64,000 nt of DNA, taken from Rebecca billardiae RCC1528 (taxonomy: Eukaryota; Protista; Haptophyta). The stretch covers positions 3,286,001 through 3,350,000 of the forward strand of contig OZ251224.1 of assembly GCA_965240325.2 (NCBI GenBank), given 5' to 3'. Shown piece after piece: positions 7,580 to 59,605 of the stretch. The position numbers and the translations under genes were made by a program. The notes beneath the pieces are model-generated. The model saw only the letters and a list, made by a program, of their open reading frames with translations, did not search any database and had not been told where the DNA came from. Positions within the stretch are counted from its first letter, which is position 1. Every line of letters starts with the position of its first letter.

Positions 7580-7790
7580 CTAGTATCAGTGCCCTTATCT
7601 ACGAGCATACTACTATCATACCTTATACAGCCGAACGCGCCACCCATACGGTACCTTACGCCACGGTCCCGACTGGGAGGCTCGAAACTGCTTCTGACGT
7701 GACGGTTGTCGACGCGCCCTGCCATCGTCGCGACGCGAATATTAATCGCCGCAGAGGCACGCGCTCGAGAGCGCGCTCTGAGAGTCTGAG

Positions 7791-8899
7791 CAAGGGTAGT
7801 AAGCTAGGGTGAGCAACTCCGCTGGCGACAGCCGCGAAGGTCGGCAGCCCTCTGTTTGCCGCGAGCGGAGCGGAGCGAGTGCTATCAGCGGCGGAGGGCG
7901 CTGAGGCCGCGCACGGCGTGAGGCGCGGCGTCGGCCGAGTCGGTCCGCGGAGGATGCGCGGCGCTCGGCCCGCTGCGCAGCGGCAGTGCGCCTCACTTTG
8001 CCCCGAGCGCCGTCCTCCGCGTCGCCTCCTTCCCGCCTTGGAGCAGCACGCATGTGCGCGCCGCCACCTTGAAGGCGGCACGGGCTTGCTCAGACGACCG
8101 CGCGCGCGTGGCGCGCGACTTGGTCGGCTGCGCGCGCGCGCCGCCGCGGTGCAAGGTAGCGCCGCCGCATGCGCGCGCCGTGCCCGCGCGAGCCTTTGCT
8201 CACGGCCATCTCATGAGCGTAGTGCTCGCTTGTCTGCTTGCTCTCACGAATGATTTGCTGTGCCTCACGCTGGCACTCGTCGGGTCGATCAGCGAGGTGT
8301 TGAGTGACATTGGATACCCAGGACGAAGGCCTAGTCTTGTCTATTCCTTCTCAGCACGAATGCAAGTGGACGCTAAGGCTCCGCATCGATGGTACCAACA
8401 CTCACGCCGCTGTCTTTTCCAGCTTCCCGTCAGTCCGCAAGTCGGATGCCAAGCAGCATTCGACATGTGTGTGAGGTCGCACTCAGGTCCGCGCACACGC
8501 TCTCGCGCTGGCACGGCGCGCGCATGCGGCGGCGCTACCTTGCACCGCGGCGGCGCGCGCGCGCAGCCGACCAAGTCGCGCGCCACACGCGCGCGGTCGT
8601 CTGAGCAAGCCCGTGCCGCCTTCAAGGTGGCGGCGCGCACATGCGTGCTGCTCCAAGGCGGGAAGGAGGCGACGCGGAGGACGGCGCTCGGGGCAAAGTG
8701 AGGCGCACTGCCGCTGCGCAGCGGGCCGAGCGCCGCGCATCCTCCGCGGACCGACTCGGCCGACGCCGCGCCTCACGCCGTGCGCGGCCTCAGCGCCCTC
8801 CGCCGCTGATAGCACTCGCTCCGCTCCGCTCGCGGCAAACAGAGGGCTGCCGACCTTCGCGGCTGTCGCCAGCGGAGTTGCTCACCCTTACTACCCTTG
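7791..8899. mobile_element. Non-autonomous foldback DNA transposon, family A copy 1 (P/Galileo-like)
   Basis: About 400-bp TIRs (CAAGGGTAGTAAG...CTTACTACCCTTG), about 300-bp spacer, 7-bp TSD GTCTGAG at 7784-7790 and 8900-8906; near-identical copy at 31634-32764. Confidence 0.92.
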
Positions 8900-8929
8900 G
8901 TCTGAGCCTCTGACACACCGCTGGTACAA

Positions 8930-8950
8930 GTTAAAACATAGTAAACTGTA
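8930..8950. repeat. Solo transposon-end motif GTTAAAACATAGTAAACTG-TA (also at 21513-21541; variant at 39949-39979)
   Basis: Three dispersed copies, all ending in the same AGTAAACTG|TA terminus as the MITE at 6065/7577. Confidence 0.6.
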
Positions 8951-9730
8951 GTCGTGAAAACAGCGGGGGCCTAGCGGCCTTTTCCCGGTGGGGCTGGTCG
9001 AACACAGCGCGTCTAGGACGCGACGGAGAAGCTTGCCAGGGCCGGCAGACCCGACGACGATGAGACGAGTTGGCCGTTCAGCGCTGACTAACGGTATCAT
9101 CCGAGCTGCCGCGTCTTCGCGCGTCGCGTGTGCGATTTAGCCATTAGCCAGGTGCGGCAGCGTGGCTCTCCCAGTTCTGCAAGGCCCACCGAGGCGCCAG
9201 CGAGGCGCGCGTCGATGCAGTCAATGCAGTCGTCGCTGCGCACGGCCGCTCGGGCACGGCGGCACGGCAACGGCACGCACCGATCACGCCGTGCGTGCGC
9301 GCGTCGGCCATCGACGCGTGGTAGTCGTGCAGCAACTGCAGTCCGCACGTCGTGCGCGCTGCTGCCGCCGGACGCCCAGATGGCGCGCGACCGCGTCGGT
9401 CGCGGCGGCCTCGCGCGCCGCGCGCGGTTCGGCTCGACGCGCGGCGTGACCCTCGCGGCGCTCCGCGTTGCGCGCCTCGTCCACGCCGTTCAGCGTGCTC
9501 GCCAGCCGCGCTGCGCGAGGCACGCGTCGAGCGCTGCCGGCGTCTCGCAGTTTGGGTGCGAGGCCGCGGGCGCGCGCGCGCCGGGGCGCGTGGCCTCGTG
9601 CGGGTGCACGGCGAGGCGCGCCAGGTCCGTACCGTTACCGTATTGTATAGGCGGTATGAACTGGGTAAGGGGGTACCGCTAAGATCGCCGCCAGATTTGT
9701 GGGAATCGCAACGACATCTCTATGCGGCGC

Positions 9731-9828
9731 GCGCAAAAATTAACCACATGCGCTTCGATTCCCGAGGCGTGCCTTAATTGGCGCAAAAATTAACCAAGTG
9801 CGTTCTCGATTCCCGAGGCGTGCCTAAT
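9731..9828. repeat. About 50-bp tandem duplication in AT-rich, TE-end-like DNA
   Basis: gcgcaaaaattaacca...tcgattcccgaggcgtgcct occurs twice (9731, 9781). Confidence 0.75.
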
Positions 9829-10199
9829 CAAAAAACGTTTGAGGCCCCATTCTTCGTATTCCTACTCCGGTATTACTTGGGACAGCAGTACGTCACACCC
9901 AATTAAAGGGGGTCGGAGCTGGGTCTCCCAGGGCTTTGTCACGAATGGCGGGCCGTAGGTCCGCCCCTTGTAGTGCCCGGGAAAAAGATAAGAAAAAGAA
10001 AAAGAAAAAAGAAAATCGCCTCGCAGAGAAAAGAAAATCGCCTCGCTCACTGCCAGGTCGCTTCGCTCACTACCGGGCGCCCTCGCAGCTCCCACTGGGG
10101 ACGCTCGGCCGAAAACCATCTGCGGCCTGGCGCGGAGCGCGTGGGCGGCGCGCGCCAAATCCAACGCTAGCGCGAACATCGTGAGGGGATTCCCGAACG

Positions 10200-11696
10200 G
10201 TGTTTTCGCCCGATTCGCGATTGCTGCCCTCGTCGTCTCGCGTGCAGGTCGAACGGGGGCTAAATCGACGCGTTGGAGCGGTACGCTCGGCGCGTCGACA
10301 CGATCGTGCGACCTGGGGCGATCCTCGCCCGACGTGCACGTCGAGCGCTCGCACGGGCCATAGCATCATGCGCTGCGCAAGACAACCACCTCGCACGATC
10401 CACCGTCGCGCGTCGGGCTCGGTGCGGAAACGCATTCATCACGAGGCGTCTCGCGGGCGGGAAGCGCCATCGCACGCGACGCAAGCTTTGGCGCGGCCTT
10501 CTGAACACCATAACCGGAATGCACACACCGGACTGTCGTCGCGTGACCCGGTTGGCAAGGTCGGGCGCATGCAAATCCGTTTGCTACGGTCGGTGGTGTT
10601 CCAGAGCGAGCGATCATCTTTCATCTTTCACGCTCGCGAGCTCGCGGCCAAGGATCGCTTGGCGCTCGAGGACCCACGTCCGGCCTGCATGGCGTCGACG
10701 GTGGCCAATGCGACGGAGGGGCAGCGCGAAGCGGCGTACGACGCGCACCGCACGCACCTGCCGGGTCTGCCGCCGTGGCAGGAACCGCGTCTTCGCGAGT
10801 CGGCGACTGAGGCGACAGCGCGCTATCACCGATCCCAGGGGCGCATTCGCGACGAGCTGAAACGTCGCGCGTGCAAGATCGCCGCACCATCCTTGCCCAT
10901 GGCACGGGCGCTGCGGGACGAGGCCGACGTCGTGAAGCCAGTGGCACATGCGCTGCGCTTCGTGTGCCTGCTCGAGCAGCGCGTGCCCACCGTCGATCGC
11001 GAGTGGCACACGCTCTCGCACTGCGCGCGCGTACACCGCCAACAGCTCCTGATACCGCCGCACGTGCGAGTGCCGGACCTGTCGCGCGGAGCGGCGAGCG
11101 CCGACGAGCGCTTGGACCTGGACGCGCTGTTGCGCAGCGTGGCGGCCGTGCACGACGCCGACGCGACCTTCGCCGAGCCCATCGTGCCCGGAGCGGACAT
11201 TGGCATCCTGGCGACACACGATCTCAGCTGGCGACACGAGGAGATGCTCACGATCTCCTCTGGCGGATTCGTCGGCGGCGAGGCGCTCGACTACGTCATC
11301 GCGGTCGAGATGCGGCACATGCAGCGCGTACGCGAGCTCGCGCGAAGCCACGGGCTGCCCGTCCCGCCCCGCGTGCTGCACGTTCCCTCGTGGGTGTGGA
11401 CCTTGCTCATGGGCGCGGGCGTGTACGCGTGGGAGAAGGTGGCCGACATCTTTGCGCTCTTCGACCTGAACGAGTACGACGTGCTCTCCTTCATCATCAA
11501 CCAGGACGCCAACCACTGGGCGCAGGGGGTCGTCGACTTGCGGCGCGAGATCATCGAGTACCGCGAGCCCCTGGGCGGAGGCGACATGATCGGCTTCGTT
11601 TCGAACGTGCAGCTGCTGCTCGCCGACGCGCAAGAGACAGAGAGACAGAAATCGGTAGGATGCACTGAACATCACACTCCGGCCGCCACAACTTGA
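10200..11696 (+). CDS. Ulp1/SENP-like (C48) cysteine protease domain ORF, probably TE-borne and truncated
   Basis: FVGGEALDYVI...VLSFIINQDANHWAQGVVDLRREIIEYREPLG resembles Ulp1 'LNDEVINFY...PIN.G.HW.L.V.D....I.YYDSL'. The catalytic Q..DCG segment is absent before the stop. Start uncertain. Confidence 0.55.
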   Translation: MFSPDSRLLPSSSRVQVERGLNRRVGAVRSARRHDRATWGDPRPTCTSSARTGHSIMRCARQPPRTIHRRASGSVRKRIHHEASRGREAPSHATQALARPSEHHNRNAHTGLSSRDPVGKVGRMQIRLLRSVVFQSERSSFIFHARELAAKDRLALEDPRPACMASTVANATEGQREAAYDAHRTHLPGLPPWQEPRLRESATEATARYHRSQGRIRDELKRRACKIAAPSLPMARALRDEADVVKPVAHALRFVCLLEQRVPTVDREWHTLSHCARVHRQQLLIPPHVRVPDLSRGAASADERLDLDALLRSVAAVHDADATFAEPIVPGADIGILATHDLSWRHEEMLTISSGGFVGGEALDYVIAVEMRHMQRVRELARSHGLPVPPRVLHVPSWVWTLLMGAGVYAWEKVADIFALFDLNEYDVLSFIINQDANHWAQGVVDLRREIIEYREPLGGGDMIGFVSNVQLLLADAQETERQKSVGCTEHHTPAATT

Positions 11697-12319
11697 ACTG
11701 TTTTCGTGTTTAGCTCCAAGGACAAACCGTCACCGTCAGGCGCACACGGGCACGCCGCCGTCGCACGCCAATCAGTTGGCAGTGCGTGCGCGCAGTCGCC
11801 AAGGCTCGGCACGATGACGAGTAGCATCACAGTGGGTGCAGGAATACACGCGCAATCACACTGTCGCTGAGCTCGCACCAGAGTCATCTGTCGCGTTATT
11901 ATTCGTCAGTGAGTCGGGTAGCTCACAATCATCTCGGTATGATGTCGCATTGTTATTCGTAGTCATCCTGCCCGTCAAACCGCTATAAATAAAAGGCGCG
12001 AACCCGCTGGGGAAATATTGCGACAGCACTGGCACGGCCCGCCGACCCCCCCGCCCGCCAGGGCTGAGTTTTAAAATTGTTTAAAGCTGTGTTCACCAGA
12101 ATAATACTCTCAACTCGCTGCGCTCGCAGGCACGAGGGACAGCGGCCGCTACAGGTGGATACGGGTGATCTGGACAGTGGCCGACCCAACTCACGCGGAG
12201 GCCTCCCTGGGAGCATTGGGGTCGAAGGGGCGCCAGGGACGGACTTCAGGGGGTCCCTGGAGTTCCGCCGCAGCGCGCTTTCTGCGCTGCGGGCCCGTCT
12301 CCGCGCGTGGCGGCCGCAA

Positions 12320-13800
12320 TGGCACTGTCCAATTAGCCCCTGGCACTGGCTGAGGCATGGGAATCGAGCTCAGAGACGCGCGCGCGGAGGAAAAGCGTGT
12401 GCAGCGGCTCGGACGGTTGCTCTGGGACCTACCCACGCCAGCGCAACCGCGCCTTGCCTCGGAGTCCGCCCTTCCTGAGTCCGCGCACGCGCCTTGCGGC
12501 TTGAAACGCTGGCGTTCGCCCTTGTGCGCGGGACTCACGAAACAAGGCGAAGGCGGCGAGAAGCGCGACCTGGCGCGTGCGCAGACGACGTCTCACGACC
12601 AGGTGAGTTCAGCGAACATCGTGCGCCGTCGTGGCGACCCGCCAGTGGGCGCTCGTGCTCGTTCGCCCACGAGCCCTCGCCACGAGGCCCGCCGCCCGCT
12701 GAGTGTCCAGATAGCCCCTGTGTCCAGTTAGCCCGTATCCACCTGTACGGACTATGGAGCGCTCGTTGGAACTTGACGCCGGTTTGGCGCCCGCGCGGCG
12801 AGGGCGACGACGGGCGTACACGGGGCCCGCGGCGGCGGGAAGCGCGCGGGCGCGGCCGAGAACGGCACGGTCCGGACGCCTCTCGCCAGCCGCGGACGCG
12901 CACCGCGCCTCCTCCTCGCACGCTGCTAACTTGATCCGGGTTAAACGGTGGTTTTGCTGCCGACCAGCTCAAGTTCCACGGCTGGTCAAGGTTCGGCTTG
13001 CGACCTCGCCGCTGGTGCTACTGTAGCAAGAAGGTACACGAGTTTGTCGAACTCCCACGCACCCGCTCTGCGCTCGTCGACGCCCTCTGAAGGTGACTTG
13101 GGGTGCATGCGGGGCAGTGGAATGCAGTGGTTCGGCGTTGCCTCTCAGTCGTCCAGCGCGCAGGCCATGTGGCGCGGGTGTGGTGCGCGCATGGCCCGGT
13201 GATTCGGTCGCGGCATGTCTGTCTGGGCTGCCCAAGGCCTGCCGCACCGCGAAGCGAGCGCTCAGGAGCGTGTGCCGACCGTGCCAGCCCCGCCGAGATG
13301 GGGCACTTCGCTGGGAAATGCGGTGTCAAGTTCCAAGCCCCGCCAAGTTCCAACGAGCGCTCCATACCCCATGCCGCTCCGAATTCCTTTCTTGGCGCGA
13401 CGCCACGTGGCGTCGCGCGCGCATGTGATGGCACGGCATACCCCGCAGCGGCCCGAGCCCCGAGTCGAGCCCGTCGGCCGGCGTCGCGCGCTGGGCGCGC
13501 GCGCTTGCCGACGCGAGCTGTGTCCGCGAGACCGCGGTCTGGGCCGTGCTTTTGTGCAGCGCCGCGCGTGTGCGTGCTGCTTCAAGGCGCGGAGGAGGCG
13601 AGGAAGAGGAAGGCGCGCGGCGTAGAGAGGGGCACCGTACGGCTCTGCGACGGCTCAAGCCCCGCGCCGCCTCCGCAGCCCGACCCGACGGCCGCAGTAG
13701 CGCACGGCGCGAGCGGCCCGGCCGGCGCCGTGGCCCGGCGCCGGGCGGGCGAGTGCCGCTGGCGAGCGGCGACCTTGAGATGAGTGAGCAGCCTCTGCCG
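12320..13800. mobile_element. Degenerate DNA-transposon remnant related to foldback family A
   Basis: Inverted motif tatggagcgctcgttggaacttg (12753-12775 vs 13343-13366), repeated TGTCCARWTAGCCC, and 13565-13620 similar to the family A TIR interior (gcgtgctgctycaaggcg...ggaggcga). Confidence 0.45.
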
Positions 13801-13857
13801 CGCCTAACTACTCCGCAAATCCGCGCGACGCCGGCTGACGCATACCGCGAGTCGTAA

Positions 13858-14137
13858 TATATTTAACGACGTGGTATGCAACCGGCAAGCGTCAGGCTCA
13901 GAGTGCAGCAGACACAGAATGCGTCCGCGCCTTCCGTCCAGGTCAGACAGTGCGCCACCCGCAGCCCTGCCCCCCTACGGGAGCGGGGCCGGGATGGAGC
14001 ACCGCCTCGGCCTGGGGCGCGCGGTGGCGACGGCAGATGCCGCCGCGGCCGAGCGCCTTCCGGAGCACTTGGGTGAGGGTGAGGTCGTAGTCGATGTCGC
14101 CGCCCGCCGACCTAGCGGCTGTAAGCAGCTCCGCGGC
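13858..14137 (-). mobile_element. 5'-truncated 3' end of a LINE/SINE-like retroelement (subfamily 1)
   Basis: About 225 bp near-identical to 44413-44641 and similar to 63165-63310. Copies share one fixed end (...cacgtcgttaaata on minus) and have variable other ends. Confidence 0.65.
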
Positions 14138-14269
<132 letters not shown>

Positions 14270-14493
14270 ACTGATGATGCACAATATCGCCGTGAGTGGC
14301 GCTACTGCTAATCAGTAATCTGCTTTGCGGCCACGGTGCAGAGTCGCCGCTGAGTCGGTCGCCCCCCGAGCTGCTTATTATTCAGCAGACGGATATATCT
14401 ACTGGGTACGGTCCAAGCAGCGCGCGCCTTCAAGACTCGTGCTTGGCCACGCGTGTCCCACCGAAGGTCCCCGCCTAATCGCCCAGCACATCG

Positions 14494-17400
14494 TCACGCG
14501 CTCAGCTGATGCGCCTCGTCCTCCTCCTCCTCGCCGCCACCCGGCTCAACACGCAGTCGTGGTACCGCGGGGCGCGCAGGTGACGATGGACGCCAGTCCT
14601 GTGCTCGCGCGTGCGACACGGACCGCGGTCCCACCGGGTCGCGCATCGAGCGCAGACCGGCACGCCTGCTGGGGCTTGCGCTCGGCGCGCTCGTCAGGTG
14701 GAGAGCCTGGGAGCTCTGGCTGCGCGCGCGCGCGGACTGCGAGTGCTCCGCATCAGAGCTGCCAACCACCGCGTCGGCGATGCGCGCCGTCGCGCCCTCC
14801 AGTGCCGCGAGTCGCCTCGTGATGCGCATCCGCCACCGGTCGTCCGCATCGGCGTCCACAATGCGCTCGAGCATGAAGTCAAGCGCTGCCTCGATCATCT
14901 GCTCACGCCACTCGGCCGAGCCCGCCGCGTGACGGCCGTGACGGCCGATCGCGCGCGACCCGCCGCCCGTCACCCCACGCGGGCCCTCCGTGCCCGCGCC
15001 AACAGCCACTGCGCGGGCGGTGGCAGTGTCACTCTCGCTCGGCGCGCGCGCGGAGGACAGCGCGTCCTCAGACGCGCGAGCGCTCTCGCGCAAGTCGTGC
15101 TTGGGTGCCCCGCTTCCGCCTCGGTCGCCCGCGTCGGCGTCGGCGTCCGTGTTCTCGCGTGCGCCCATGCCCGAGCGTGCTCCGCTCTCGTCGCGCGCGG
15201 CGGCTCGGCTGCCGCCGCCCTTGCGCGCCAGCGCGAGCAGCCGCGACGCTGAGCTGTGGGACTCCGTGTGTGCGGGGTTGTGACGGGCGCTGCCGCTGCG
15301 GCCGTGGGCGCGCGCGCGGCGCTGCCGCCGCCGCCGCCGCCAGCGCAGGAGCGCGAGCACCGCGCGACTCGGGATGCCAAGCAGGTTGAGCGGCGGCGGC
15401 GCGGGCGGCAGCCGCGCCGCCGCCTGGATCAGCTTCGCCTGCACGAACTTGGCGTGCACGTCGAGCTGGTCGTGGATCGTGTCGAAGGTCTTGGACATCG
15501 TCGCGATCACCACGTTGAGGAGCAGCACGATCATCACGAGGGCGAAGACCATCATCACCGTCCACGCGAGCCAGCCCACGTGCGACTGGCGCAGGCAGTC
15601 GTACCGCGCGTCCGCGCCGCCGAACGTCACCTCCATCAGCACGACGAACGCCAGGCCGAGCGAGCCGCCAAACTCCGCGTGCAGCTCCGCCTGCGCATCC
15701 GGGTCGCCGGCGGTTGAGCAGCCCGCGCCGTCCGCGCCGAGCGTCGCCTCCTTCAGAAGCACGTGGAGCGCCGCGCCGAAGGCGGCCAGCAGCGGCAGCA
15801 TGAGGCACACGATGCGTGCAACGTCCTGGAGCATTCGGAACACCTGCGCGCGCGCGGGACACCGGGGGCGGCGGCGCGCGCCTCCCGCGGCGTGAGCGGT
15901 GCGTGGCGCGCGGCGCCGCGCACCGCGCACTGCTCACGCGAGGGGTTGGGAGAGCTGGTGGCGGATTAAAGTCGCCTCCGAACGGCGCGCGCCGCGCGCT
16001 GCGCGGCGCGGCGCGCGCCGCGGGCGATGCGCGCGGCGCGCGCGCTCGCCATGAGCAGGAAGGGCCCGAGCGCCGACGAGAGGTAGAGCACGCGCATCTG
16101 CCGGATGACGAGGCCGAGCAGTGCGACGGCCATGAGCTGCGTCGCGAGCGGCGCCTCGGTCGCGTCGAGCTCCGGCTCGGCGCGCGCGCCCGCCGAGTAG
16201 GCCGCGCCGCGCGCGATTCGCATCGCCAGCGCGACCGCACACAGCACCAGGCCACCCATCTCGAACCCGTTGAAGTCGTCGGCGAGCCACGCGCCCGCGC
16301 CGCCGCGCAGCAGCTCCTCCAGCTCGACGACCAGCGCGCCGATCGCGTTGAGCAGCGCGAGCCACTCCACCGCCAGCTGCCGGTCGTCCGCCAGCGCCTC
16401 GAGACTCAGCGAGTGGTCGCCTTCGCCCGCGCCCTCGCCCCGCCTCTGCTCCGTAACCTCGCGAGCGCCCGCGCGCGACGCGTCGGCGGCCGGCCGGATG
16501 GGGCGCAGCGAGACGCACGCCGCGACGAGCGCCGCGCCCATCAGCCAGTGCCCGAGGAGCTTCACGATCGGCGAGTCGAGCAGCACCGCCGACGCGCCGT
16601 ACGAGAAGGTGCGCGTGCCGCGCCCCGCGCGCTGCTTGAGCACGCCCGCTCGGAACGTGATCACGAGCCGAGCGGACAGAGTCCGGATCAAGTCCGGGAA
16701 GAAGACGATGGGGAGGGCGATGAGCGGCTGGAGGGCGAGGACGAGGGCGGGCGAGGCGAGGAGGAGGAGCCACGCCTTGCGCGGCGACGTGTACTCGCGC
16801 AGCATGAAGACCATCCTCCGCAGCTCCAGCGCCGCCTGCAGCGCGCTCCCGCCAAGCGCTCGCGCGTGCGCCGCCTGCACCGGAGGATACGACAAGATCA
16901 GCGTGCACCCGCCCTGCGCCGCGCGCTCGAGCAGCGGCCGCTGAGACTCCCAGCCCTCGCGCGCGGCGGCGCCGTCTCCGCCGCCGCCGCTCCCGCCGCC
17001 GCCGCCGCCGCCAGCCGCGGCCGCGCGCCCGCGGCCGCCGCCCGCCGGCGCGGGCGCGGCGAAGGCCAGCTCGGCCGAGCAAATGGCGAGCTCGAGCAGC
17101 CGCGCCGCGTGCCTGCAGCCGTCCTCCGCCGCCTGGCCGGCCTGCTCGCGCAGCCGCGGCGCGAGGGCGGCGCACGCGATCGAGCTCTCCAGCGCGAGGT
17201 GCGCGCCGCCCGTGTGCGCCACGCTGAACGCCACCACCAGCGCCGCCGTCTCCAGCTGCTCATCGCCGTCCAGAGCGCAGATCCACTGCGCGACGTCGGC
17301 GCCCGCGCCGCGCACGGCGCTGTCGCCTCGCGTGTCCAGCACGCTCGAGCGCAGGGCCGAGGCGCCGCGCAGCCCGCGCATCGCGAGGCTGGTCGGAAGC

Positions 17401-19304: not shown

Positions 19305-19350
19305 CGTCCGAGCATAGCAGCAGCTTCGTCCATTGGAAGGTTTTCGCAGC

Positions 19351-20488
19351 CAAGGGCGGTTCCTAAGGGCTGTCAACTCCCAGTGGCGGCGGTGGCAGAG
19401 GTTGGTCGCCGCTTCGCTGCTGCGCGGCCTCGCTCCAGCGACTACTGTAACTCTCGTGGGCGCCCGCCCTGGGGGGCGAGTGGGGCGCGCACGGCGCGAG
19501 CTCCTGTGGCCGTGTACGCGCGCGCGGAGGCGGCGCGCGTGGCTGGGCAGGTGCTAAGGAGTGTATGTCGCCCTCCCACGCCGCGCGCCTTGCTCGCCGC
19601 CGCTTTCGCCGCGCCTCAGGCCAGCGCGCACGCGTGCGCCGCCTCCAGAGCCAGCCTCGGGCAATCGGCAGCCGCCCGCGCATGTGTGATGCGCGGTCTG
19701 GTCGGCGCGAGTCGGTCGGGGCCATCGGGCGAGGCTCGCATACTATAGACGCGCGCCATGCTGCCTCGCGCCGCCGCGCGTGGGTTGTCATGGGTCGACA
19801 CGCAAGCATCTTAGGTCTGACACGAACTGCAGCACGAATGCGAAAATGCTCATGTTTGGACGCTCATGGAGACGCTGGAGAGCACAATAGACGCGCGCAG
19901 GCGATGAAGAGCGGGGCAATGCACTCATAGGACGCCGTACACGCGCCCAATGCGGCCGCCTATCACGCGCATGTGCGCTCACTGTCACGTATTCGAGCTC
20001 ATTTCTGCTTGTCGTGCATTCATCGATCAGCTTCCTTCAACAGCTTCACGGGATGGGACCGGGCCCATGCGCGGCGGCGCGAGGCAGCATGGCGCGCGTC
20101 TATAGTATGCGAGCCTCGCCCGATGGCCCCGACCGACTCGCGCCGACCACACCGCGCACCACACATGCGCGGGCGGCTGCCGATTGCCCGAGGCTGGCTC
20201 TGGAGGCGGCGCACGCGTGCGCGCTGGCCTGAGGCGCGGCGAAAGCGGCGGCGAGCAAGGCGCGCGGCGTGGGAGGGCGACATACACTCCTTAGCACCTG
20301 CCCAGCCACGCGCGCCGCCTCCGCGCGCGCGTACACGGCCACAGGAGCTCGCGCCGTGCGCGCCCCACTCGCCCCCCAGGGCGGGCGCCCACGAGAGTTA
20401 GTCGCTGGAGCGAGGCCGCGCAGCGACGAAGCGGCGACCAACCTCTGCCACCGCCGCCACTGGGAGTTGACAGCCCTTACCGCCCTTG
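19351..20488. mobile_element. Non-autonomous foldback DNA transposon, family B (P/Galileo-like)
   Basis: About 425-bp TIRs (CAAGGGCGGT...ACCGCCCTTG), about 290-bp spacer, 7-bp TSD TCGCAGC at 19344-19350 and 20489-20495. Confidence 0.92.
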
Positions 20489-20554
20489 TCGCAGCGGTCG
20501 CTCATCGGGCGGAGCTTTCAGCGTGCTTGCGCTCCCGCCTCCCGGCCGAGATCG

Positions 20555-31568: not shown

Positions 31569-31633
31569 GGGTGGCGGTGTACCGTACGCGTAGAGTCGTT
31601 CGGCGACCCTGACCAAGCTGAAAGCGGCCGAGG

Positions 31634-32764
31634 CAAGGGTAGTAAGGGTGAGCAACTCCGCTGGCGACAGCCGCCGAGGTCGGTCGGGCTCTGTTTGCCT
31701 CGGCGAGCGGTGCGAGCGGAGCGGAGCGAGTACTATCAGCGGCGGAGGGCGCTGAGGCCGCGCACGGCGTGAGGCGCGGCGTCGGCCGAGTCGGTCCGCG
31801 GAGGATGCGCGGCGCTCGGCCCGCTGCGCAGCAGCAGTGCGCCTCACTTTGCCCCGAGCGCCGTCCTCCGCGTCGCCTCCTTCCCGCCTTGGAGCAGCAC
31901 GCATGTGCGCGCCGCCACCTCGAAGGCGGCACGGGCTTGCTCAGACGACCGCGCGCGTGTGGCGCGCGACTTGGTCGACTGCGCGCGCGCGCTGCCGCGG
32001 TGCAAGGTAGCGCCACCGCATACGCGCGCCGTGCCCGCGCGAGCCTTTGCTCACGGCCATCTCATGAGCGTAGTGCTCGCTTGTCTGCTTGCTCTCACGA
32101 ATGGTTCGCTGTGCCTCACGCCGGCGCTCGTCGGTCGATCAGCGAGGTGTTGAGTGACATTGGATACCCATGACGAAGGCCTGGCCGTGTGTATGCCTTC
32201 TCATCACGAATGCGAGCGGACGCTAAGGCTCCGCATCGATGGTACCAACACTCACGCCGCTGTCTTTTCCAGCTTCACGTCACTCGGCACTAGTCGGATG
32301 CGCAAGCAGCACTAGACATGTGTGTGAGCTCGCACTCACGTCCGCGCACACGCTCTCGCAAGGCCACGGCGCGCGTATGCGGTGGCGCTACCTTGCACCG
32401 CGGCAGCGCGCGCGCGCAGTCGACCAAGTCGCGCGCCACACGCGCGCGGTCGTCTGAGCAAGCCCGTGCCGCCTTCGAGGTGGCGGCGCGCACATGCGTG
32501 CTGCTCCAAGGCGGGAAGGAGGCGACGCGGAGGACGGCGCTCGGGGCAAAGTGAGGCGCACTGCTGCTGCGCAGCGGGCCGAGCGCCGCGCATCCTCCGC
32601 GGACCGACTCGGCCGACGCCGCGCCTCACGCCGTGCGCGGCCTCAGCGCCCTCCGCCGCTGATAGTACTCGCTCCGCTCCGCTCGCACCGGGCGCCGAGG
32701 CAAACAGAGCCCGACCGACCTCGGCGGCTGTCGCCAGCGGAGTTGCTCACCCTTACTACCCTTG
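31634..32764. mobile_element. Non-autonomous foldback DNA transposon, family A copy 2
   Basis: About 400-bp TIRs CAAGGGTAGTAAGGG...CCCTTACTACCCTTG, 7-bp TSD GCCGAGG at 31627-31633 and 32765-32771; spacer homologous to copy 1. Confidence 0.92.
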
Positions 32765-32866
32765 GCCGAGGCAAGGGCCGAGGGAAGAAGGGGCGGCGCT
32801 TCGTCCAACACGGCCGCGGGGAGCGTGCTCGTCCGACAAGGGAGCGTGCTTCCGAGGACCGAGGAG

Positions 32867-40205: not shown

Positions 40206-40634
40206 TCAGCTTCTCGTGGGCGGTTGGGACGCGAAAGCAGGGTCGACGTGTATGGGCTGTGTGGGGAGGTCAAAGCTGAAGTCAGCTGCTGCTGAGGGCG
40301 GCGTTGGCTCGGCTTGCTCTGCTTGCGACGCGCTGGCCACGAGCGTCTGCAAGCTTGAGCGCTGGGCTTGTGCCGCTTTGATTTGTTGGGAGATCGCCTT
40401 TTTTGCCTTCTTCGTCTCCTTCTTACCCGCCCCCTTGCCCACCTTGAGCCGTGCCCGCTTCGCATCTGCGATTTCGCGCTGCAGTTGCTTTCTCAACGCC
40501 ACGCGCTCCTTGTGCGAGCTCCCAGCGTTCGTCGGAGCTGCATCGTCGACGTCCATGCCATCTCGTGGCGCAGGCCGGTCGTACGGCTTGGCACGCTTTG
40601 CCTTAGCGCCCCCGCGTTTTCGTGTGCCCTTCAT
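40206..40634 (-). CDS. Small basic coiled-coil hypothetical protein
   Basis: 142-aa Lys-rich ORF with protein-like composition, divergent from the MFS gene. Confidence 0.6.
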   Translation of the reverse strand: MKGTRKRGGAKAKRAKPYDRPAPRDGMDVDDAAPTNAGSSHKERVALRKQLQREIADAKRARLKVGKGAGKKETKKAKKAISQQIKAAQAQRSSLQTLVASASQAEQAEPTPPSAAADFSFDLPTQPIHVDPAFASQPPTRS

Positions 40635-44412: not shown

Positions 44413-44641
44413 ATATATTTAACGACGTGGCAGCATCGGACAAGCGTCAGGCTCAGAGTGCAACAGACACATAGAATGCGTCCGCGCCTTCCGTCCAGGT
44501 CAGACAGTGCGCCACCCGCAGCCCTGCCCCCCTACGGGAGCGGGGCCGGGATGGAGCACCGCCTCGGCCTGGGGCACGCGGCGGCGACGGCAGATGCCGC
44601 CGCGGCCGAGCGCCTTCCGGAGCACTTGGATGAGGGTGAGG
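44413..44641 (-). mobile_element. 5'-truncated LINE/SINE-like 3' end (subfamily 1) with (TAG)n tail
   Basis: Near-identical to 13858-14083; adjacent (CTA)n on the plus strand. Confidence 0.65.
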
Positions 44642-45504: not shown

Positions 45505-45636
45505 CGTTCCGACGACAACTGGCTCCTCTCCAAGTTCATCTTCCTCGGCGCATCGGCACGCGACGACGGCACGCGGCTGCGAGCGCTGCTCGCGCTACAG
45601 TAGCTACTCGGCCTTCAGGAGACATTGGACGCATCG

Positions 45637-52727: not shown

Positions 52728-53040
52728 CAAGGGCGGTAAGGGCTGCAAACTCCCAGTGCCGCGAGTGAGAGGAGGTTGGGTACCGATCAACTCGTGCGCC
52801 CTCGCGGCGCAGCGGCAAGGTCTTCCGGGGCGCCGCCCTGGAGGGTGCGTGGGGTGGCGCACGCCGCGTGCTCCTGCGCCCGCGGCAGCGGGCGCGGACA
52901 CGGCGCGCGTGGTTGGTCGCATGCTAGACAGCACGTAGTACCCTCCCGCGCCGCGCACCGCGCTCGCTGGCGCCCTCGCCGTGCCTCACGGGCCAGCCCG
53001 CGCCCGCGCGCCGCACCAAGATCCAGCGGGCGCACGAGTT
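52728..53040. mobile_element. Solo diverged TIR of foldback family B
   Basis: Begins CAAGGGCGGTAAGGGCTGCAAACTCCCAGTG and tracks the 19351 TIR for about 300 bp; no partner or TSD found. Confidence 0.75.
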
Positions 53041-53100
53041 TGCCCTCGAACGGTAGAGTAAGTAACAATAATGGTGTGTCGTAATTTGTGCTGTGATGTA

Positions 53101-53217
53101 ATTTATTAACGACGTGGTATGCAACGGGCAGGCGTCAGAGTCAGCAAGCTGTAGCAGCAGATCGAGCAGCAGAGACAAACACCAGGATCAGCGCTCCTCG
53201 CCGTCGTCCCCCCCCTC
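53101..53217 (-). mobile_element. 5'-truncated LINE/SINE-like 3' end (subfamily 2)
   Basis: Matches 62893-63037; shares the terminal aacgacgtggtatgcaac with subfamily 1; AATAAA on the minus strand. Confidence 0.6.
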
Positions 53218-54189
53218 ATAGTGATGTAATTTATGAGCCCTTGCACGCCTATGTAGATATTTGCTGAATAGACTCGTCAAAAATAATGGTAGTAGTGACT
53301 GATCTGGTCGCCATTCAGCCAGGTTTGGCGTTTGCCACTGGCGACTGCACACGGCAACAGGGGCGTTTGCGCCCTGTTGTCGTGTGCACACTGGGGCGCA
53401 AAAGGGGTCACCCTCAGGGGGTTTCGCACTGCTGTTGCCGTGTGCACCGGCCCGCTGTGGCCGTGCACACGGCAACAGGGCGCAAACGGCCCTGTTGCCG
53501 TGTGCAGGCGTGCATGGCTTGCGATGGCAGCCAGCCGTCAGCAGGGCGCCACGCCCACTGTTCGTTGGTAGGCTGGCCCGATGGCGTCGCGGAGCTCACG
53601 CGTACGGGGGAGGAGGGCATCGACGAGGAGACGACCAAGGGCGAGAAGCAGCAGGGGGCACGCAGCACGGGGCTCGGAGCATGCAGCGAGCACGCGTGCC
53701 TCCATACCGTCGCACATCAACCTTGCTCGTAGCTGTGCGCTGTGCTGCCACTCATCTCACCATCGCCCATGCTACGGGCGCGGCCCGGTGGTGGGCATCT
53801 ACCTGTCGGCGCAGCACTGGCACCGGTGGTCGCCAGACACTCCTCGACTTGCTCTGCGCGTCACAGCAAGGAGACGGCAGCGGCACAGCTGCGTGAGCAC
53901 ATGAGGTCCTACTACTCTAGTAGTACTCGGCGAGGCAGTACAGGCATGGACTGCACTCCAGGTGCATGCGAGCTACTGGCATACTCCCCTACTCAGACCG
54001 CAGGACCATCAATGCGGCGCTGCTTCGGATACACGAGCGCAGCGCTGCTGGTAACAGCGGCGCTGTTGATGCTGCAGCAGCAGTACGTACAGTATAATGA
54101 CGGGCGGCAGCAGTTGCTCCAACTAACAGCTCGGTGGTGCTCGCTTGAACGGCCTGGGCAATGGCGCGCCAAACGCAGCGACCTGGCCC

Positions 54190-56520
54190 ATCGCGCCCGC
54201 CGCGATGGGGTCGCTGGCACCTGATGATGCTGCACCCGCGCCCATCCGGGCCGCCAACACCAGCGGCAGCCACGCTCGAGTCTGCACTGCATGCGGCAGC
54301 AGCTGCTGGAATGGTCCCGCGGCGGATGACGGCTTTCGCCGCAGATGACAGCTCGGTGTCGCTCGCTCGAGGGGCCTCGTCGATGGACGCGCCGAGCGCC
54401 GTGACGTTGCTCCACACGACCACGGCACTGCCCAGCGCGCTGGAGCCGCTGCCATCTGGTGCTGCTGTGCCCGCGCCCAGCTGGGGCCCAGCTGCAGCTG
54501 CACTTGACTCCGCGCCGCATTGGCTGCAGCAGCAGGGATGGTGCCACGGCGGGCGGCGTGGGTCGGCGCAGCTGTCAGCTCGGCGGTGCGCGCCCGAGGG
54601 GCCCGGGCATTGGATGCACCGAGCGCGGTGTCACTGCTCGCCTCCCGCAGCGCGCTGGAGCCGCTGCCATCCGACGCTGCTGCGCCCGCGCCCAGCTTGG
54701 GCAGCAGCGGCTGCGCTAGACTCCGCGCCGCGTGCGGCAGCAGCAGCAGGGATGGTGCCACGGTGGGCAGCGGCGGTTGCTGGAGCTGAAAACTCGGCTG
54801 TGTGCGCCCGAGGGGCCTGGGCGGTGGGCGCACCGAGCGCGGTGCCGCTGCTCGCCTCGCCCATGGCGCTCGAGCCGCTGCCATCCGACGCTGCTGCGCA
54901 CGCGCCAAGCTTGGGCAGCAGCGGCTGCGCTCGACTCCGCGCCGCGTGCGGCAGCAGCAGCAGGGATGGTGCCACGGTGGGCGGCGGCGGTCGCTGGAGC
55001 TGAAAGCTCGGCTGTGTGCGCCCGAGGGGCCTGGGCGGTGGGCGCACCGAACGCGGTGCCGCTGCTCGCCTCGCCCATGGCGCTCGAGCCGCTGCCATCC
55101 GACGCTGCTGCGCCCGCGCCAAGCTTGGGCAGCAGCGGCTGCGCTCGACTCCGCGCCGAGTGCGGCGGCAGCAGCAGGGATGATGCCACGGCGGGCGGCG
55201 TGGGTCGCTGGAGCTGAAAGCTCGGCGGTGTGCGCCCGAGGGGCGTGGGTGCTGGACGCACCGAGCGCGGTGCCGCTGCTCGCCTCGCCCATGGCGCTCG
55301 AGCCGCTGCCATCCGGTGCTGGTGCGCCCACGCCCAGCTGGGGCAGCAGCAGCAGCGGCGCTCGACTCCGCGCCGCGTGCGGCAGCAGCAGCAGGAATGG
55401 TGCCACTGTGGGCGGCGGCGGTTGCTGCAGCCGGCAGCTCGGTGGCGCACGCCCGAGGGGCCTGGGCTGCAGACGCGCTGAGCGCGCCATCGCCGCTCGC
55501 CTCCCGCAGCGCGCTGGAGCCCTGCCATCCGACGCTGCTGCGCTTGCGCCCAGCTTGGGCAGCAGCAGCTGCGCTCGACTCCGCGCCGCGTGCGGCGGCA
55601 GCAGCAGGGATGGTGCCACGGCGGGTGGCGGCGGTCGACGCAGCTGAAAGCTCGGCGGTGCACGCCCGAGGGGCCTGGGCGGTGGGCGCACCGAACGCGG
55701 TGCCGCTGCTCGCCTCCCGCAGCGCGCTGGAGCCGCTGCCATCCGATGCTGCTGCACCAGCGCCCAGCTTGGGCAGCAGCAGCCGCGCCTGACTCCGCGC
55801 CGCGTGCGGCGGCAGCAGCAGGGATGGTGCCACGGCGGGCGGCGGCGGTCGACGCAGCTGGAAGCTCGGCAGCGCACGCCCGAGGGGCCTGGGCGCTGGG
55901 CGCACCGAACGCGGTGCCGCTGCTCGCCTCGCCCATGGCGCTCGAGCCGCTGCCATCCGACGCTGCTGCGCCCGCGCCCAGCTTGGGCAGCAGCGGCTGC
56001 GCTCGACTCCGCACCGCGTGCGGCAGCAGCAGCAGGGATGGTGGCACGGCGGGCGGCGGTGGTTGCTGCAGCCGGCAGCTCGGCGGTGCACGCCCGAGGG
56101 GCCTGGGCGCTGGACGCACCGAGCGCGGTGCCGCTGCTCGCCTCGCCCATAGCGCTGGAGCCGCTGCCATCCAGTGCTGCTGCGCCCGCGCCCGGCCAGG
56201 GCAGCAGCAGCAGCGCTCCACTCCGCGCCGCGTGCGGCAGCAGCAGCAGGGATGGTGCCACGGCGGGCGGCCGCAGCAGCTGAAAGCTTGGCAGTGCCCA
56301 CCCGAGAGGCGTGGGCGCTGGACGCACCGAGCGCGGTGTAGCCGCTCGCCTCGTTCCGTAGCGCGCTCGAGCCTCTGCCATCCGATGCCGCTGCGCCCGT
56401 GCCCCGGCGCCGCTGCACGGCTGCAGCTGGCAGGCCTGGCAGCAGCTGCGCTCCGGAGGCTTCGCGCCGCATGCGGTGGTAGCAGCAGGGAGGTGCCACG
56501 GCCAAGCCGGCGGCGGTGGT
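54190..56520 (+). repeat. 214-bp tandem array, about 11 units (left arm)
   Basis: Anchor ccgctgccat at 54446, 54661, 54875, 55089, 55303, about 55519, 55733, 55947, 56161 and about 56372. Confidence 0.92.
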
Positions 56521-57339
56521 CGGGCGGTGCTGAGTGCTGCTTGGCACGCGCGCCGACCGGTCGTCGTTAAAACTATTGTATCATACGTACTCTACTACAG
56601 TACTACGGTCCCGGCGTATAAGTATAGACTGCTGACCAGCTGACCGTGACCGTGTCGCGCCGGAGTGTAGCACGGTGATGACGCCAGCAGTCGAGCTGCT
56701 ACTGCTGCTGCTCACTACTGATGCTCGTACATTGATGAGTTAGCTTCTACTAACTTACACTGTGAGCCGCCAGGCCCAGCACGACTTGTCGTCGCGACAG
56801 TCCGGCCGGACGCGGACGACGAGACCATCACATCACTGATAAGTGACTAGCTACGCGAGCAGTCAGGCTGTGACGGCGGACAGACGACAACACCGCCGCC
56901 AGGGTACCGATCCGGATAGACCGCTAGGTGGAGTAAGAGTCACTTCAGAGTATATATATACGCACATGACGGCAGAGTGTCGGACAGCCGCCGCCCCGGA
57001 GCTGGCTGATGCATCGTCGTAGTCGGAGTACCGCTCTGAACGGCTAGTCGGAGCAGATTGACGATGATTCGAGATATATGCTCGGTGCCGTAGTACGCGT
57101 GGATAATTTAAAGAGTTCTTACGTCGTACTCGTCTAGGCAGATGCTGATGTAGTGATGACGATGCATGATGCTGCTGATAACTTCTGCATCGCCTACCTG
57201 CCGGGCTACGACTGGTATGCGCCGCCGGCCTTATGAATATGAGCTGACCGGCATTGCCCGCCCCGGAACCTGCTGGCGGCTCGGCTCGCAGCAGGACAGA
57301 AGAAGTGTCGTAGCAACAGCTCCGGGGGCTGGCCAGCGC

Positions 57340-58545
57340 GCCTGACGCGTGCATCAGCGTCACTGCATTGCGCGCGTCTGCCGCCCAGGCCCCTCGCGCG
57401 TGCAGCACCGAGCTGCTAGCTGCATGCACCGCCGCCCGCCCGCCGTGGCGCCATCCCTGATGCTGCAGCCGCACTCGGCGCGACAGGGCGCGGGCGCGGC
57501 AGCATCGGATGGCAGCGGCTCGAGCGCGCCGGGCGAGGCGAGAGGCGTCAGCGCGCTCAATGCACCCACCGCCCAGGCCCCTCAGGCGCACACCGCCGAG
57601 CTTTCAGCTCTAGCGTCGTCGCCCACCGTAGCACCATCCCTGCTGCTGCCGCCCCACGCGGCGCGGAGTCGAGCGCAGCCGCTGCTGCGCAAGCTTGGCG
57701 CGGGTGCAGCAGCGTCGGATGGCAGCGGCTCCAGCGCCATGGGCGAGGCGAGCAGCGGCACCGCGTTCGGTGCGTCCAGCGCCCAGGCCCCTCGGGCGTG
57801 CACCGCCGAGCCGACAGCTCCGTCGACCGCCGCCGCCCGCCGTGGCACCATCCCTGCTGCTGCCGCCGCACTCTGCGCGGAGTCGAGCGCAGCCGCTGCT
57901 GCCCAAGCTTGGCGCGGGCGCAGCAGCGTCGGATGGCAGCGGCTCCAGCGCCATGGGCGAGGCGAGCAGCGGCACCGCGTTCGGTGCGCCCACCGCCCAG
58001 GCCCCTCAGGCGCACACCGCCGAGCTTTCAGCTCTAGCGACCGTCGTCGCCCGCCGTAGCACCATCCCTGGTGCTGCCGCCCCACGCGGCGCGGAGTCGA
58101 GCGCAGCCGCTGCTGCCCAAGCTTGGCGCGGGCGCAGCAGCGTCGGATGGCAGCGGCTCCAGCGCCATGGGCGAGGCGAGCAGCGGCACCGCGTTCGGTG
58201 CGCCCACCACCCAGGCCCCTCGGGCGTGCACCGCCGAGCCGACAGCTCCGTCGACCGCCGCCGGCCGCCGTGGCACCATCCCTGCTGCTGCCACGGCACG
58301 CGGCGCGGAGTTGAGCGCAGCTGCTGCTGCCCAAGCTGGGCGCGGGCACAGTAGTGCTCGAGGCAGCGGCTCCAGCGCGCTTGGCAGTGCCGTGGGCGCA
58401 TCGAGCAGCGTCACCACGCTCGGCGCGTCCGTCGTCCAGGCCCTTCGAACCAGTGACACCAAGCTGTCAGCCGCGGCGACCGCCGTCATCCGTGCAGGAC
58501 CATCCCAACGGCCCAGCTGCTGCTGCCGCGTGCAGCATAGAGTAG
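57340..58545 (-). repeat. 214-bp tandem array, about 5-6 units, inverted (right arm)
   Basis: Anchor gatggcagcggctc at 57508, 57718, 57932, 58146 and about 58360; reverse complement of the left-arm unit. Confidence 0.92.
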
Positions 58546-59605
58546 AGCGCCCCTCAGCCTGCCGGCAGAGTGGGGCGCAGGTGTTTGAAGCAGCACCCGG
58601 CGGTTGGTCCTGCGCTCCTGGGCACGGCTATGTACCTGTTGGTCTCATGAATGCGGGGGAATGCCAGCGCTCGCCACGCGTGCTCAGCTTCTCAGCCTCG
58701 CAAAGCAGAGGAGCACTTCATCTGCGAGCTCACACAGCTGTGCCGCTGCCGTCTCCTTGCTGTGACGCGCAGAGCAAGTCGAGGAGTGTCTGGCGACCAC
58801 CGGTGCCAGTGCTGCGCCGACAGGTAGATGCCCACCACCCGGCCGCGCCCGTAGCATGGGCGATGGTGAGATGAGTGGCAGCACAGCGCACAGCTACGAG
58901 CAAGGTTGATGTGCGACGGTGTGGAGGCACGCGTGCTCGCGGCATGCTCCGAGCCCCGTGCTGCGTGCCCCCTGCTGCTTCTCGCCCTTGGTCGTCTCCT
59001 CGTCGATGCCCTCCTCCCCCGTACGCGTGAGCTCCGCGACGCCATCGGGCCAGCCTACCAACGAACAGTGGGCGTGGCGCCCTGCTGACGGCTGGCTGCC
59101 ATCGCAAGCCATGCACGCCTGCACACGGCAACAGGGCCGTTTGCGCCCTGTTGCCGTGTGCACGGCCACAGCGGGCCGGTGCACACGGCAACAGCAGTGC
59201 GAAACCCCCTGAGGGTGACCCCTTTTGCGCCCCAGTGTGCACACGACAACAGGGCGCAAACGCCCCTGTTGCCGTGTGCAGTCGCCAGTGGCAAACGCCA
59301 GACCTTACTGCGCCATTATGATGTGGTCACCGTTCGCCGACTCTGATGAGGTACGCATCGATGAATATCATCATGGAAGTGGGCCATGCCGTCAAAGGAA
59401 TGAAACCGTTAATTATCCGTGGGCTGGGAAGTGGGAATCCACGGCTTCGTTCGCATCGACGACGATGATGATTCCATTGATTCGCTCCCGAGGGCCGAGG
59501 CCAATTTGCCCACGACTCGGTGTCACTACCGAGTACGCACGTGCACTCCCCGGGAGCGTTGCTTTACTTATGCGCACGGCTCGCACAGCTCAGCCCCCAC
59601 CGACG

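What the first reader, a model, noticed from the sequence alone, without database searches (positions are those of the whole stretch)
7784..59317. Three families of CA...TG foldback elements with 7-bp TSDs (P/Galileo-like), all landing just 5' of genes
Seen: four complete elements (7791-8899, 19351-20488, 31634-32764, 53316-59310) with 400-580-bp TIRs, CA..TG ends and perfect 7-bp TSDs (GTCTGAG, TCGCAGC, GCCGAGG, CGCCATT), plus a solo TIR at 52728. Families A and B share the terminus CAAGGGYRGTAAGGG...AACTCC. Each complete copy is within about 50-330 bp of a predicted ATG, none is inside a CDS, and none encodes a transposase. Known: CA..TG ends with 7-8-bp TSDs are typical of the P superfamily, Drosophila Galileo is a foldback P relative with 7-bp TSDs, and P elements favour promoters. 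Inference: a recently active, promoter-homing P-like foldback system in a protist, mobilised in trans.
Basis: partly seen in the sequence, partly recalled or inferred. Interest (0 to 1): 0.85.

Follow-up and report, generated by a model that had tools for sequence, protein, structure and literature searches.

The report
Foldback transposons with 7-bp duplications
Four hairpin-shaped, non-coding jumping-gene copies really do sit just upstream of genes in this GC-rich algal-type genome, but the enzyme that moves them is not in the window, so the "P-element-like" label stays a good guess, not a result.

Summary
Four complete elements have 398-583-bp inverted arms that are 98.5-99% complementary, CA...TG ends and perfect 7-bp target-site duplications (TSDs).

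Families A and B share about 50 terminal bp and have homologous arms, but their loops are unrelated. Family C is unrelated in sequence.

No internal ORF, and none of 145 window ORFs, matches a transposase family. All copies are therefore non-autonomous.

New findings here:
- The two arms of a copy evolve in concert: 13 paired substitutions against 5 single-arm ones.
- Beside A2 lies TSD-CAAGG-TSD, which reads as an excision footprint keeping five element-end bases.
- A public-run contig shows another CAAGGG-type end abutting A1's TSD, so the same heptamer appears to be reused.

The bias towards gene 5' ends is suggestive only (P about 0.005-0.05, n=4, crude gene models).

P/Galileo-like is the best fit, based on the 7-bp TSD, the long arms, the footprint type and the promoter bias. 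Without a transposase it is untested, at about even odds.

The scan's first readers noted the same family on other pieces of this genome at least ten times, all unchecked. I rate it a new member of a known kind, of moderate interest.

The parts
7784..7790 (.). A1 left TSD, GTCTGAG
7791..8192 (.). A1 left arm (402 nt). It starts CAAGGGTAGTAAG and carries a 4-nt insertion 11-13 nt from the tip relative to the right arm.
8193..8501 (.). A1 loop, non-coding, 56% GC against 75% in the arms
8502..8899 (.). A1 right arm, ending ...CCCTTACTACCCTTG
8900..8906 (.). A1 right TSD, GTCTGAG. In run X1 a contig continues from here into another CAAGGG-type terminus.
13440..13832 (.). Degraded solo right-arm relic of an A/B-like family (71% to A over 160 nt), with an eroded terminus
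19344..19350 (.). B left TSD, TCGCAGC
19351..20488 (.). Element B (1138 bp): arms 19351-19784 and 20064-20488, loop 19785-20063. It splits a roughly 105-bp divergent intergenic region between ATG 19304 (minus strand, LRR/ion-channel gene) and ATG 20555 (plus strand, Zn-finger/ankyrin gene).
20489..20495 (.). B right TSD, TCGCAGC
31627..31633 (.). A2 left TSD, GCCGAGG
31634..32764 (.). Element A2 (1131 bp): arms 31634-32043 and 32355-32764, loop 32044-32354. It is 92.7% identical to A1.
32765..32771 (.). A2 right TSD, GCCGAGG
32772..32783 (.). CAAGG followed by a third copy of GCCGAGG. This is a candidate excision footprint of a second CAAGGG-type element that used the same heptamer.
52728..53027 (+). 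Solo left arm of a B-related family (72-73% to B), truncated about 300 nt in
53309..53315 (.). C left TSD, CGCCATT
53316..53898 (.). C left TIR (583 nt). It begins CAGCCAGG and holds 5 copies of GCACACGGCAACAGGG in alternating orientation.
54430..56404 (.). C left 214-bp satellite array, 9.2 copies
56405..57486 (.). C centre: non-coding, lower GC, no Pfam hits
57487..58378 (.). C right 214-bp satellite array, 4.2 copies, inverted relative to the left array
58728..59310 (.). C right TIR, ending ...CCTTACTG
59311..59317 (.). C right TSD, CGCCATT, directly abutting ATG 59318 of a 1120-aa ORF

Best explanation
These are non-autonomous, foldback-type cut-and-paste DNA transposons.

Proposed mechanism:
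1. A transposase encoded elsewhere in the genome recognises the terminal tens of base pairs. For families A, B and the solo arm this is the doublet CAAGGG-N3-YAAGGG plus AACTCC. For family C it is probably the five-copy GCACACGGCAACAGGG array in each TIR.
2. The transposase excises the element with a cut staggered into the element ends.
3. It reinserts the element with a 7-bp stagger, preferentially in open promoter DNA and sometimes into a heptamer that is already occupied.

The two long arms of each copy are kept nearly identical by conversion between arms, not by youth.

The transposase is most likely of the P superfamily (Galileo/1360 type). That last step is inference.

Shown here: element anatomy, TSDs, lack of coding capacity, concerted arm evolution.
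Inferred: trans-mobilisation, cleavage geometry, superfamily, targeting.
For: Mobile-element status:
- Perfect 7-bp TSDs at 4 of 4 elements, with chance about 1.4e-4 per site.
- The shared terminal motif occurs 5 times against 0 expected.
- No coding capacity.

Family relationships:
- A and B arms are homologous (z=16), while the loops are not (z below 2).

Concerted evolution of the arms:
- 13 paired substitutions and 10 paired indel columns, against 5 single-arm changes.

Cleavage geometry and target reuse:
- TSD-CAAGG-TSD lies next to A2. Chance of those 12 bases is about 2.5e-7.
- An X1 contig joins A1's TSD to another CAAGGG-type end.
- Retained element-end bases fit the 17-nt staggered cut of P transposase (PMC7776569).

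Fit to the P superfamily and Galileo:
- 1360 and Galileo make 7-bp TSDs (PMC3698922).
- Galileo has long TIRs that are 98-100% identical within a copy, two-TIR non-coding copies, tandem repeats inside TIRs and solo TIRs (PMC3573991).
- P inserts around promoters.
- 5' bias here has P about 0.005-0.05.
Against: - No transposase was seen, so every superfamily statement rests on TSD length, end bases and one footprint.
- CA ends are common to many superfamilies.
- CAAGG also fits the hAT terminal consensus YARNG (my own knowledge).
- The four TSDs show nothing like Galileo's GTANTAC target motif.
- C shares only TSD length and the CA start with A/B, so it may use a different enzyme.
- According to the papers read, P-like elements are documented in animals and Trichomonas, not in algae.
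- The 5' bias rests on n=4 and ORF-based gene models.
Confidence: 0.5

Rival explanations
1. The same kind of non-autonomous foldback transposon, but mobilised by a transposase of another superfamily or an undescribed one. Candidates are a hAT-like enzyme giving 7 bp instead of 8, a MULE/Foldback-like enzyme, or a lineage-specific DDE enzyme.
For: - No transposase is available to test.
- CAAGG fits the hAT end consensus YARNG (own knowledge).
- Foldback architecture also occurs in Mutator-related elements, for example Tm1 (PMC3169594, listed).
- First readers of other windows report 7-bp-TSD elements carrying a 500-aa protein 'with no recognisable transposase motif' and an 'orphan cargo gene' (unchecked).
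- P-like elements are not documented in algae in the papers read.
Against: - 7-bp TSDs at 4 of 4 sites, where hAT typically gives 8 and MULE/FB gives 9 (own knowledge; 9-bp foldbacks are noted as separate families in this genome).
- A footprint that keeps 5 element-end bases is not what flank-hairpin enzymes such as hAT leave (own knowledge).
- Dada is excluded: it has no TIRs and targets small-RNA genes specifically (PMC3706591).
Confidence: 0.42
2. The elements began as transposons but are now retained host features at promoters, for example insulators, bidirectional promoter modules or hairpin-RNA sources. Selection, not targeting, would explain their position and their constant size of about 1.1 kb.
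For: - B sits in a 105-bp divergent promoter without obviously destroying either gene.
- A and B keep nearly the same size (1109-1138 bp) and geometry despite about 58% arm identity and unrelated loops.
- Arms diverge less than loops between A1 and A2: 3.5-4.2% against 6.5%.
- Unchecked notes report the same fixed geometry elsewhere in the genome.
Against: - No expression or small-RNA data could be examined.
- No Rfam family matches.
- Solo and eroded arms show that copies decay.
- The footprint and the adjacent-element contig point to continuing mobility.
Confidence: 0.06
3. Assembly artefacts: long-read chimeric palindromes, not real elements.
For: Foldback chimeras are a known long-read artefact (own knowledge).
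Against: - The same sequences recur at several loci, each with a different 7-bp TSD.
- An independent run's contig crosses the A1 right junction with 1 mismatch in 320 nt.
Confidence: 0.01

Closest known systems
Galileo (P superfamily, Drosophila), especially its non-coding 'two-TIR' (2T) copies and the F-type copies with tandem repeats inside the TIRs
   Same: - 7-bp TSDs.
- TIRs hundreds of bp long that are 98-100% identical within a copy.
- A short non-coding middle region.
- Tandem repeats inside TIRs with unequal copy number on the two sides (compare C: 9.2 against 4.2 units).
- Solo TIRs.
- CA-starting ends.

   Different: - No sequence similarity was tested or expected.
- No THAP/P-type transposase was seen.
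- The TSDs here do not resemble GTANTAC.
- The host is a GC-rich alga-like protist, not an insect.
- A/B copies have a strikingly uniform size of about 1.1 kb, whereas Galileo copies vary widely.
BuT5, a roughly 1-kb MITE mobilised by a divergent P element (Drosophila repleta group)
   Same: - About 1 kb, non-coding and homogeneous in size.
- Only the terminal sequences are expected to be shared with the master element.

   Different: BuT5 has very short TIRs and 8-9-bp TSDs. Here the arms are about 400 bp and the TSDs are 7 bp.
Foldback (FB) and Mutator-related foldback elements (for example Tm1 of root-knot nematodes)
   Same: Hairpin architecture with long arms, some built of tandem subrepeats, and no coding capacity in most copies.
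   Different: Those families make 9-bp TSDs (own knowledge; the Tm1 paper is listed). Here all four TSDs are 7 bp. 9-bp foldbacks are noted as separate families in this genome.
hAT-derived MITEs
   Same: The terminal CAAGG fits the YARNG consensus. They are non-autonomous and often lie near genes.
   Different: - hAT gives 8-bp TSDs, as in the hAT/Ace family of the haptophyte Tisochrysis lutea.
- hAT has short TIRs.
- hAT footprints do not keep element bases.

Membership tests
P superfamily | Transposase with an N-terminal THAP domain and a P-type RNase-H-like DDE catalytic domain (D(2)H motif, GTP-binding insertion) | not testable with these tools
   No transposase is in the window. The terminal motifs are absent from the metagenome and viral collections.
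P superfamily | 7-8-bp TSD | tested here: met
   Four of four TSDs are 7 bp. 1360 and Galileo give 7 bp and P gives 8 bp.
P superfamily | Cleavage staggered into the element, so donor-site footprints keep element-end bases | tested here: inconclusive
   One locus shows TSD-CAAGG-TSD. This is consistent with the 17-nt stagger of P, but n=1.
P superfamily | Preference for promoter or open-chromatin targets | tested here: inconclusive
   Four of four insertions lie within 327 bp of an ATG, P about 0.005-0.05. The sample is small, the gene models are crude, and the trait is not unique to P.
Galileo family | Long TIRs (hundreds of bp), highly identical within a copy, with 7-bp TSDs | tested here: met
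Galileo family | Palindromic target motif GTANTAC | tested here: not met
   The TSDs are GTCTGAG, TCGCAGC, GCCGAGG and CGCCATT, against the motif given.
Foldback / MULE-type foldbacks | 9-bp (8-10-bp) TSD | tested here: not met
   All four TSDs are 7 bp.
hAT superfamily | 8-bp TSD | tested here: not met
   All four TSDs are 7 bp; extending any of them to 8 bp breaks the match.
hAT superfamily | Terminal consensus YARNG | tested here: inconclusive
   A and B (CAAGG) fit. C (CAGCC / CAGTA) does not.
Dada superfamily | No TIRs; insertion into specific small-RNA genes | tested here: not met
   The TIRs here are long and the targets are varied. No tRNA or Rfam hits in the window.
MITE (operational class) | Non-coding, TIR-bounded, TSD-flanked, homogeneous in size, multi-copy | tested here: met
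   At about 1.1 kb they are at or above the usual MITE size. Genome-wide copy number is known only from unchecked notes.

The most novel reading that the evidence does not exclude
This is a lineage-specific foldback transposon system, either P-like in an alga (outside the documented host range) or driven by a new transposase. It homes to promoters and re-uses already occupied heptamers, giving tandem or nested pairs and a footprint between repeated TSDs. Its roughly 1.1-kb hairpin geometry and arm complementarity would be actively maintained across families whose sequences have otherwise diverged beyond recognition. That would imply a structural requirement for transposition, or a host-level role for the hairpin.
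Probability: 0.18. Interest if true: 0.65.

Novelty: new member of a known kind. Interest (0 to 1): 0.42.

Why it matters
If the partner transposase proves to be P-type, the documented range of active P/Galileo-like systems would extend from animals and Trichomonas to a GC-rich alga-like protist.

It would also provide a compact-genome model for promoter-targeted insertion.

Whatever the superfamily, three features are concrete and testable properties of long-TIR elements:
- concerted evolution of the arms;
- the uniform size of about 1.1 kb across diverged families;
- the apparent re-use of one heptamer.

In practice, these copies sit in core promoters, for example inside a 105-bp bidirectional one. 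They therefore matter for annotating and interpreting gene regulation in this genome.

Tried and rejected
Searches that found nothing useful:
- A TIR-encoded pseudo-ORF was searched in the 5.8-billion-protein database to fish out other copies. It gave no hit.
- An exact-protein look-up of the window's thiolase found it not on record.
- A homology search shows the organism's proteome is not in the database. The best hit is 91% to an unnamed JGI transcript, and the best named hit is Prymnesium parvum at 68%. The rest of the genome could therefore not be reached.
- The A/B and C terminal motifs were scanned in metagenome, viral and prokaryote-genome collections. Results were 0, 0, 0 and one chance bacterial hit.
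- Pfam on all long ORFs showed host families only.
- The 1120-aa ORF next to C was considered as a possible transposase. It has no Pfam hit and only weak Atlas neighbours. I rejected it as a transposase.
- Rfam and tRNA scans found nothing.

Read laying:
- On A1, run X1 is a low-depth, mixed set of short contigs. It showed no clean empty site.

Smaller checks:
- A general scan for footprint-like 7-mer repeats is dominated by 9-bp tandem repeats. Only the A2 case is specific.
- A near-match to the terminal motif at 40432 has no arm or partner, so it is chance.
- CCCTCGT, the heptamer left of the solo arm, recurs at 63033 inside another repeat. I judged this coincidence.
- A literature search for foldback elements in haptophytes returned no paper.
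Full report
**Context**

The window is about 68% GC and gene-dense, with roughly one gene per 2.3 kb by codon-position GC. Some genes have introns: Pfam domains start mid-profile at ORF starts.

The organism is coded. A thiolase encoded here is 91% identical to an unnamed JGI transcript and 68% identical to its best named relative, Prymnesium parvum. The host is therefore probably a haptophyte-like alga whose proteome is not in the databases available to me.

**Observation**

All four elements exist as described.

| Element | Coordinates | Arms | Loop or centre | 7-bp TSD |
|---|---|---|---|---|
| A1 | 7791-8899 | 402 / 398 nt | 309 nt | GTCTGAG |
| B | 19351-20488 | 434 / 425 nt | 279 nt | TCGCAGC |
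| A2 | 31634-32764 | 410 / 410 nt | 311 nt | GCCGAGG |
| C | 53316-59310 | 583-nt TIRs | see below | CGCCATT |

- Each TSD is perfect, and extending it by one base breaks the match.
- The chance of a 7-mer flank match is about 1.4e-4 at this composition.
- As a single strand, A1 folds into one hairpin of about -724 kcal/mol.
- The solo arm at 52728-53027 is real and 72-73% identical to the B arms.
- A second, older right-arm relic lies at about 13440-13832.
- The shared terminus occurs five times in the window, against none in shuffles.

**Families**

- A1 and A2 are 92.7% identical.
- A and B arms are homologous but distant: local score z=16, about 58% identity, strongest over the first 50 nt. 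Their loops are not alignable (z below 2).
- The TIR of C is unrelated to A/B. Its only links to them are the 7-bp TSD and a CA start.
- Inside its TIRs, C is built of 214-bp satellite arrays in mirror orientation (9.2 and 4.2 units) around a 1.08-kb non-coding centre.
- Each C TIR carries five copies of GCACACGGCAACAGGG in alternating orientation: 10 matches against 0.09 expected. This is a plausible transposase-binding array.

**Coding capacity**

There is none. Eight ORFs inside C and 145 ORFs of at least 160 aa from the rest of the window give only host families, such as kinase, thiolase, MFS, LRR, cNMP-binding, rhomboid, ankyrin and fucosyltransferase. No transposase family appears. The elements must be mobilised in trans.

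**New observation 1: the arms evolve in concert**

- In a four-way alignment of the A1 and A2 arms, 13 substitutions and 10 indel columns are 'paired': the same in both arms of one copy and different in the other copy. Only 5 changes are confined to a single arm.
- Within-copy arm divergence is 0.5-1.2%, against 3.5-4.2% between copies and 6.5% in the loops.
- Arm identity is therefore maintained by arm-to-arm conversion and is not a measure of age. This undercuts the 'recently active' inference.
- Arms are 74-75% GC and loops 56-59%. That fits GC-biased conversion, though this link is inference.
- Galileo shows the same 98-100% within-copy TIR identity (PMC3573991).

**New observation 2: a footprint and re-used targets**

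- Immediately right of A2 the sequence reads CCCTTG | GCCGAGG | CAAGG | GCCGAGG (32759-32783). This is a third copy of the TSD, separated from the second by exactly the first five bases of the element end.
- The chance of those 12 bases is about 2.5e-7. A window-wide scan finds no comparable case.
- The simplest reading is that a second CAAGGG-type element used the same heptamer and later excised, leaving five end bases between intact TSD copies.
- Independently, a contig of public run X1 matches A1's right arm, the TSD and one further base with 1 mismatch in 320 nt. It then continues as AAGGGAGTCAAGGGTGCC... Together this reads CAAGGGAGTCAAGGG, a fourth family's terminus abutting A1's TSD.
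- An unchecked note from another window also reports a 'nested pair' of about 2.2 kb.
- Footprints that keep element-end bases are expected when the 5' strand is cut inside the element, as in P (17-nt stagger; PMC7776569) and Tc1/mariner. They are not expected from flank-hairpin enzymes such as hAT (my own knowledge).
- More speculatively, A1 and B each carry a 4-nt insertion 9-13 nt from one tip, in arms that are otherwise almost free of indels. These could mark an internal cleavage position.

**Position relative to genes**

- With ORF-based gene models and the elements removed, 26% of intergenic positions lie within 330 bp of an ATG.
- The four insertions lie at 327, 46, 96 and 1 bp. The probability that all four fall this close is about 0.005.
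- Leaving out three large unannotated gaps raises this to about 0.01-0.05.
- B splits a 105-bp divergent intergenic region.
- C abuts ATG 59318, but an in-frame ATG at 53286 means it could lie ten codons into the coding sequence.
- Several unchecked notes place other copies in promoters.
- The bias is plausible but unproven. It is also not specific to P, since many DNA transposons favour open promoters.

**Classification**

In favour of P/Galileo-type:
- 7-bp TSDs, as in 1360 and Galileo;
- long, conserved TIRs, two-TIR copies, tandem repeats within TIRs and solo TIRs;
- the type of footprint;
- the promoter bias.

Against, or untested:
- no transposase was seen;
- the target sites do not resemble GTANTAC;
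- CAAGG also fits the hAT terminal consensus;
- C may be a separate system.

Excluded or disfavoured:
- Dada is excluded.
- FB/MULE-type foldbacks make 9-bp TSDs, and hAT makes 8-bp TSDs as in the haptophyte T. lutea. Both are disfavoured by TSD length.

I put P-like at about even odds, another or a new superfamily slightly lower, and domesticated or artefactual readings low.

**Novelty**

- No paper in the searchable library mentions both foldback elements and haptophytes.
- P-like elements are documented in animals and Trichomonas in the papers I read.
- First readers of this scan flagged the same CAAGGG / 7-bp family on other pieces of this genome at least ten times. All of those notes are unchecked. 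They suggest a genome-wide family but are not independent evidence.
- As it stands, this is a new member of a known kind: non-autonomous foldback DNA transposons. Its interesting features are the arm dynamics, the uniform size and the target re-use.

Noticed in passing
window 13854-14084, 44415-44641, 53098-53222, 62905-63276: Another repeat family, starting TATTTAACGACGTGG... and containing a G/C hairpin (CCCCCCTACGGGAGCGGGGC). All four copies are on the same strand and intergenic. Two lie next to long (GA)n arrays (14138-14270, 62800-62890) and two lie next to CAAGGG-type solo arms. It may be the asymmetric-end (Helitron-like) family that other notes report in this genome.
   Followed up: partly
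window 12150-12747: A roughly 600-bp element with 27-nt TIRs (TACAGGTGGATACGGGTGATCTGGACA...), possibly with a TA TSD, so a Tc1/mariner-type MITE. A very similar terminus appears as a loose end just before position 8958 in run X1, suggesting a polymorphic insertion of this family near A1.
   Followed up: partly
window 9014-9455: An X1 contig skips 442 bp here, with CTA in its place. This is an indel polymorphism between the assembly and that sample. No TIR or TSD is evident.
   Followed up: partly
window 7771-8922: A1's target lies in a micro-repeat: CTCTGAG A GTCTGAG [A1] GTCTGAG C CTCTGAC. An X1 contig also diverges from the left flank at 7781, so this promoter region may be a hotspot for insertions.
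   Followed up: no
window 8350-8360 and 19829-19839: The otherwise unalignable loops of A1 and B share the 11-mer AGCACGAATGC. CACGAATG occurs twice in the A loops. Chance probability is about 0.04.
   Followed up: no
window 10185-11693 (+): An ORF with a weak Ulp1 protease (Peptidase_C48) match, E=2.4e-4, in the same intergenic block as A1. Ulp1 domains are often carried by transposons in plants. No TIRs were found around it.
   Followed up: partly
window 30119-30310: A near-perfect (99%) 96-bp tandem duplication inside an ORF on the minus strand.
   Followed up: no
window 14494-19304 (-): The LRR ORF and the downstream ORF with an ion-transport domain, which starts mid-profile, are probably one intron-containing gene.
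   Followed up: no
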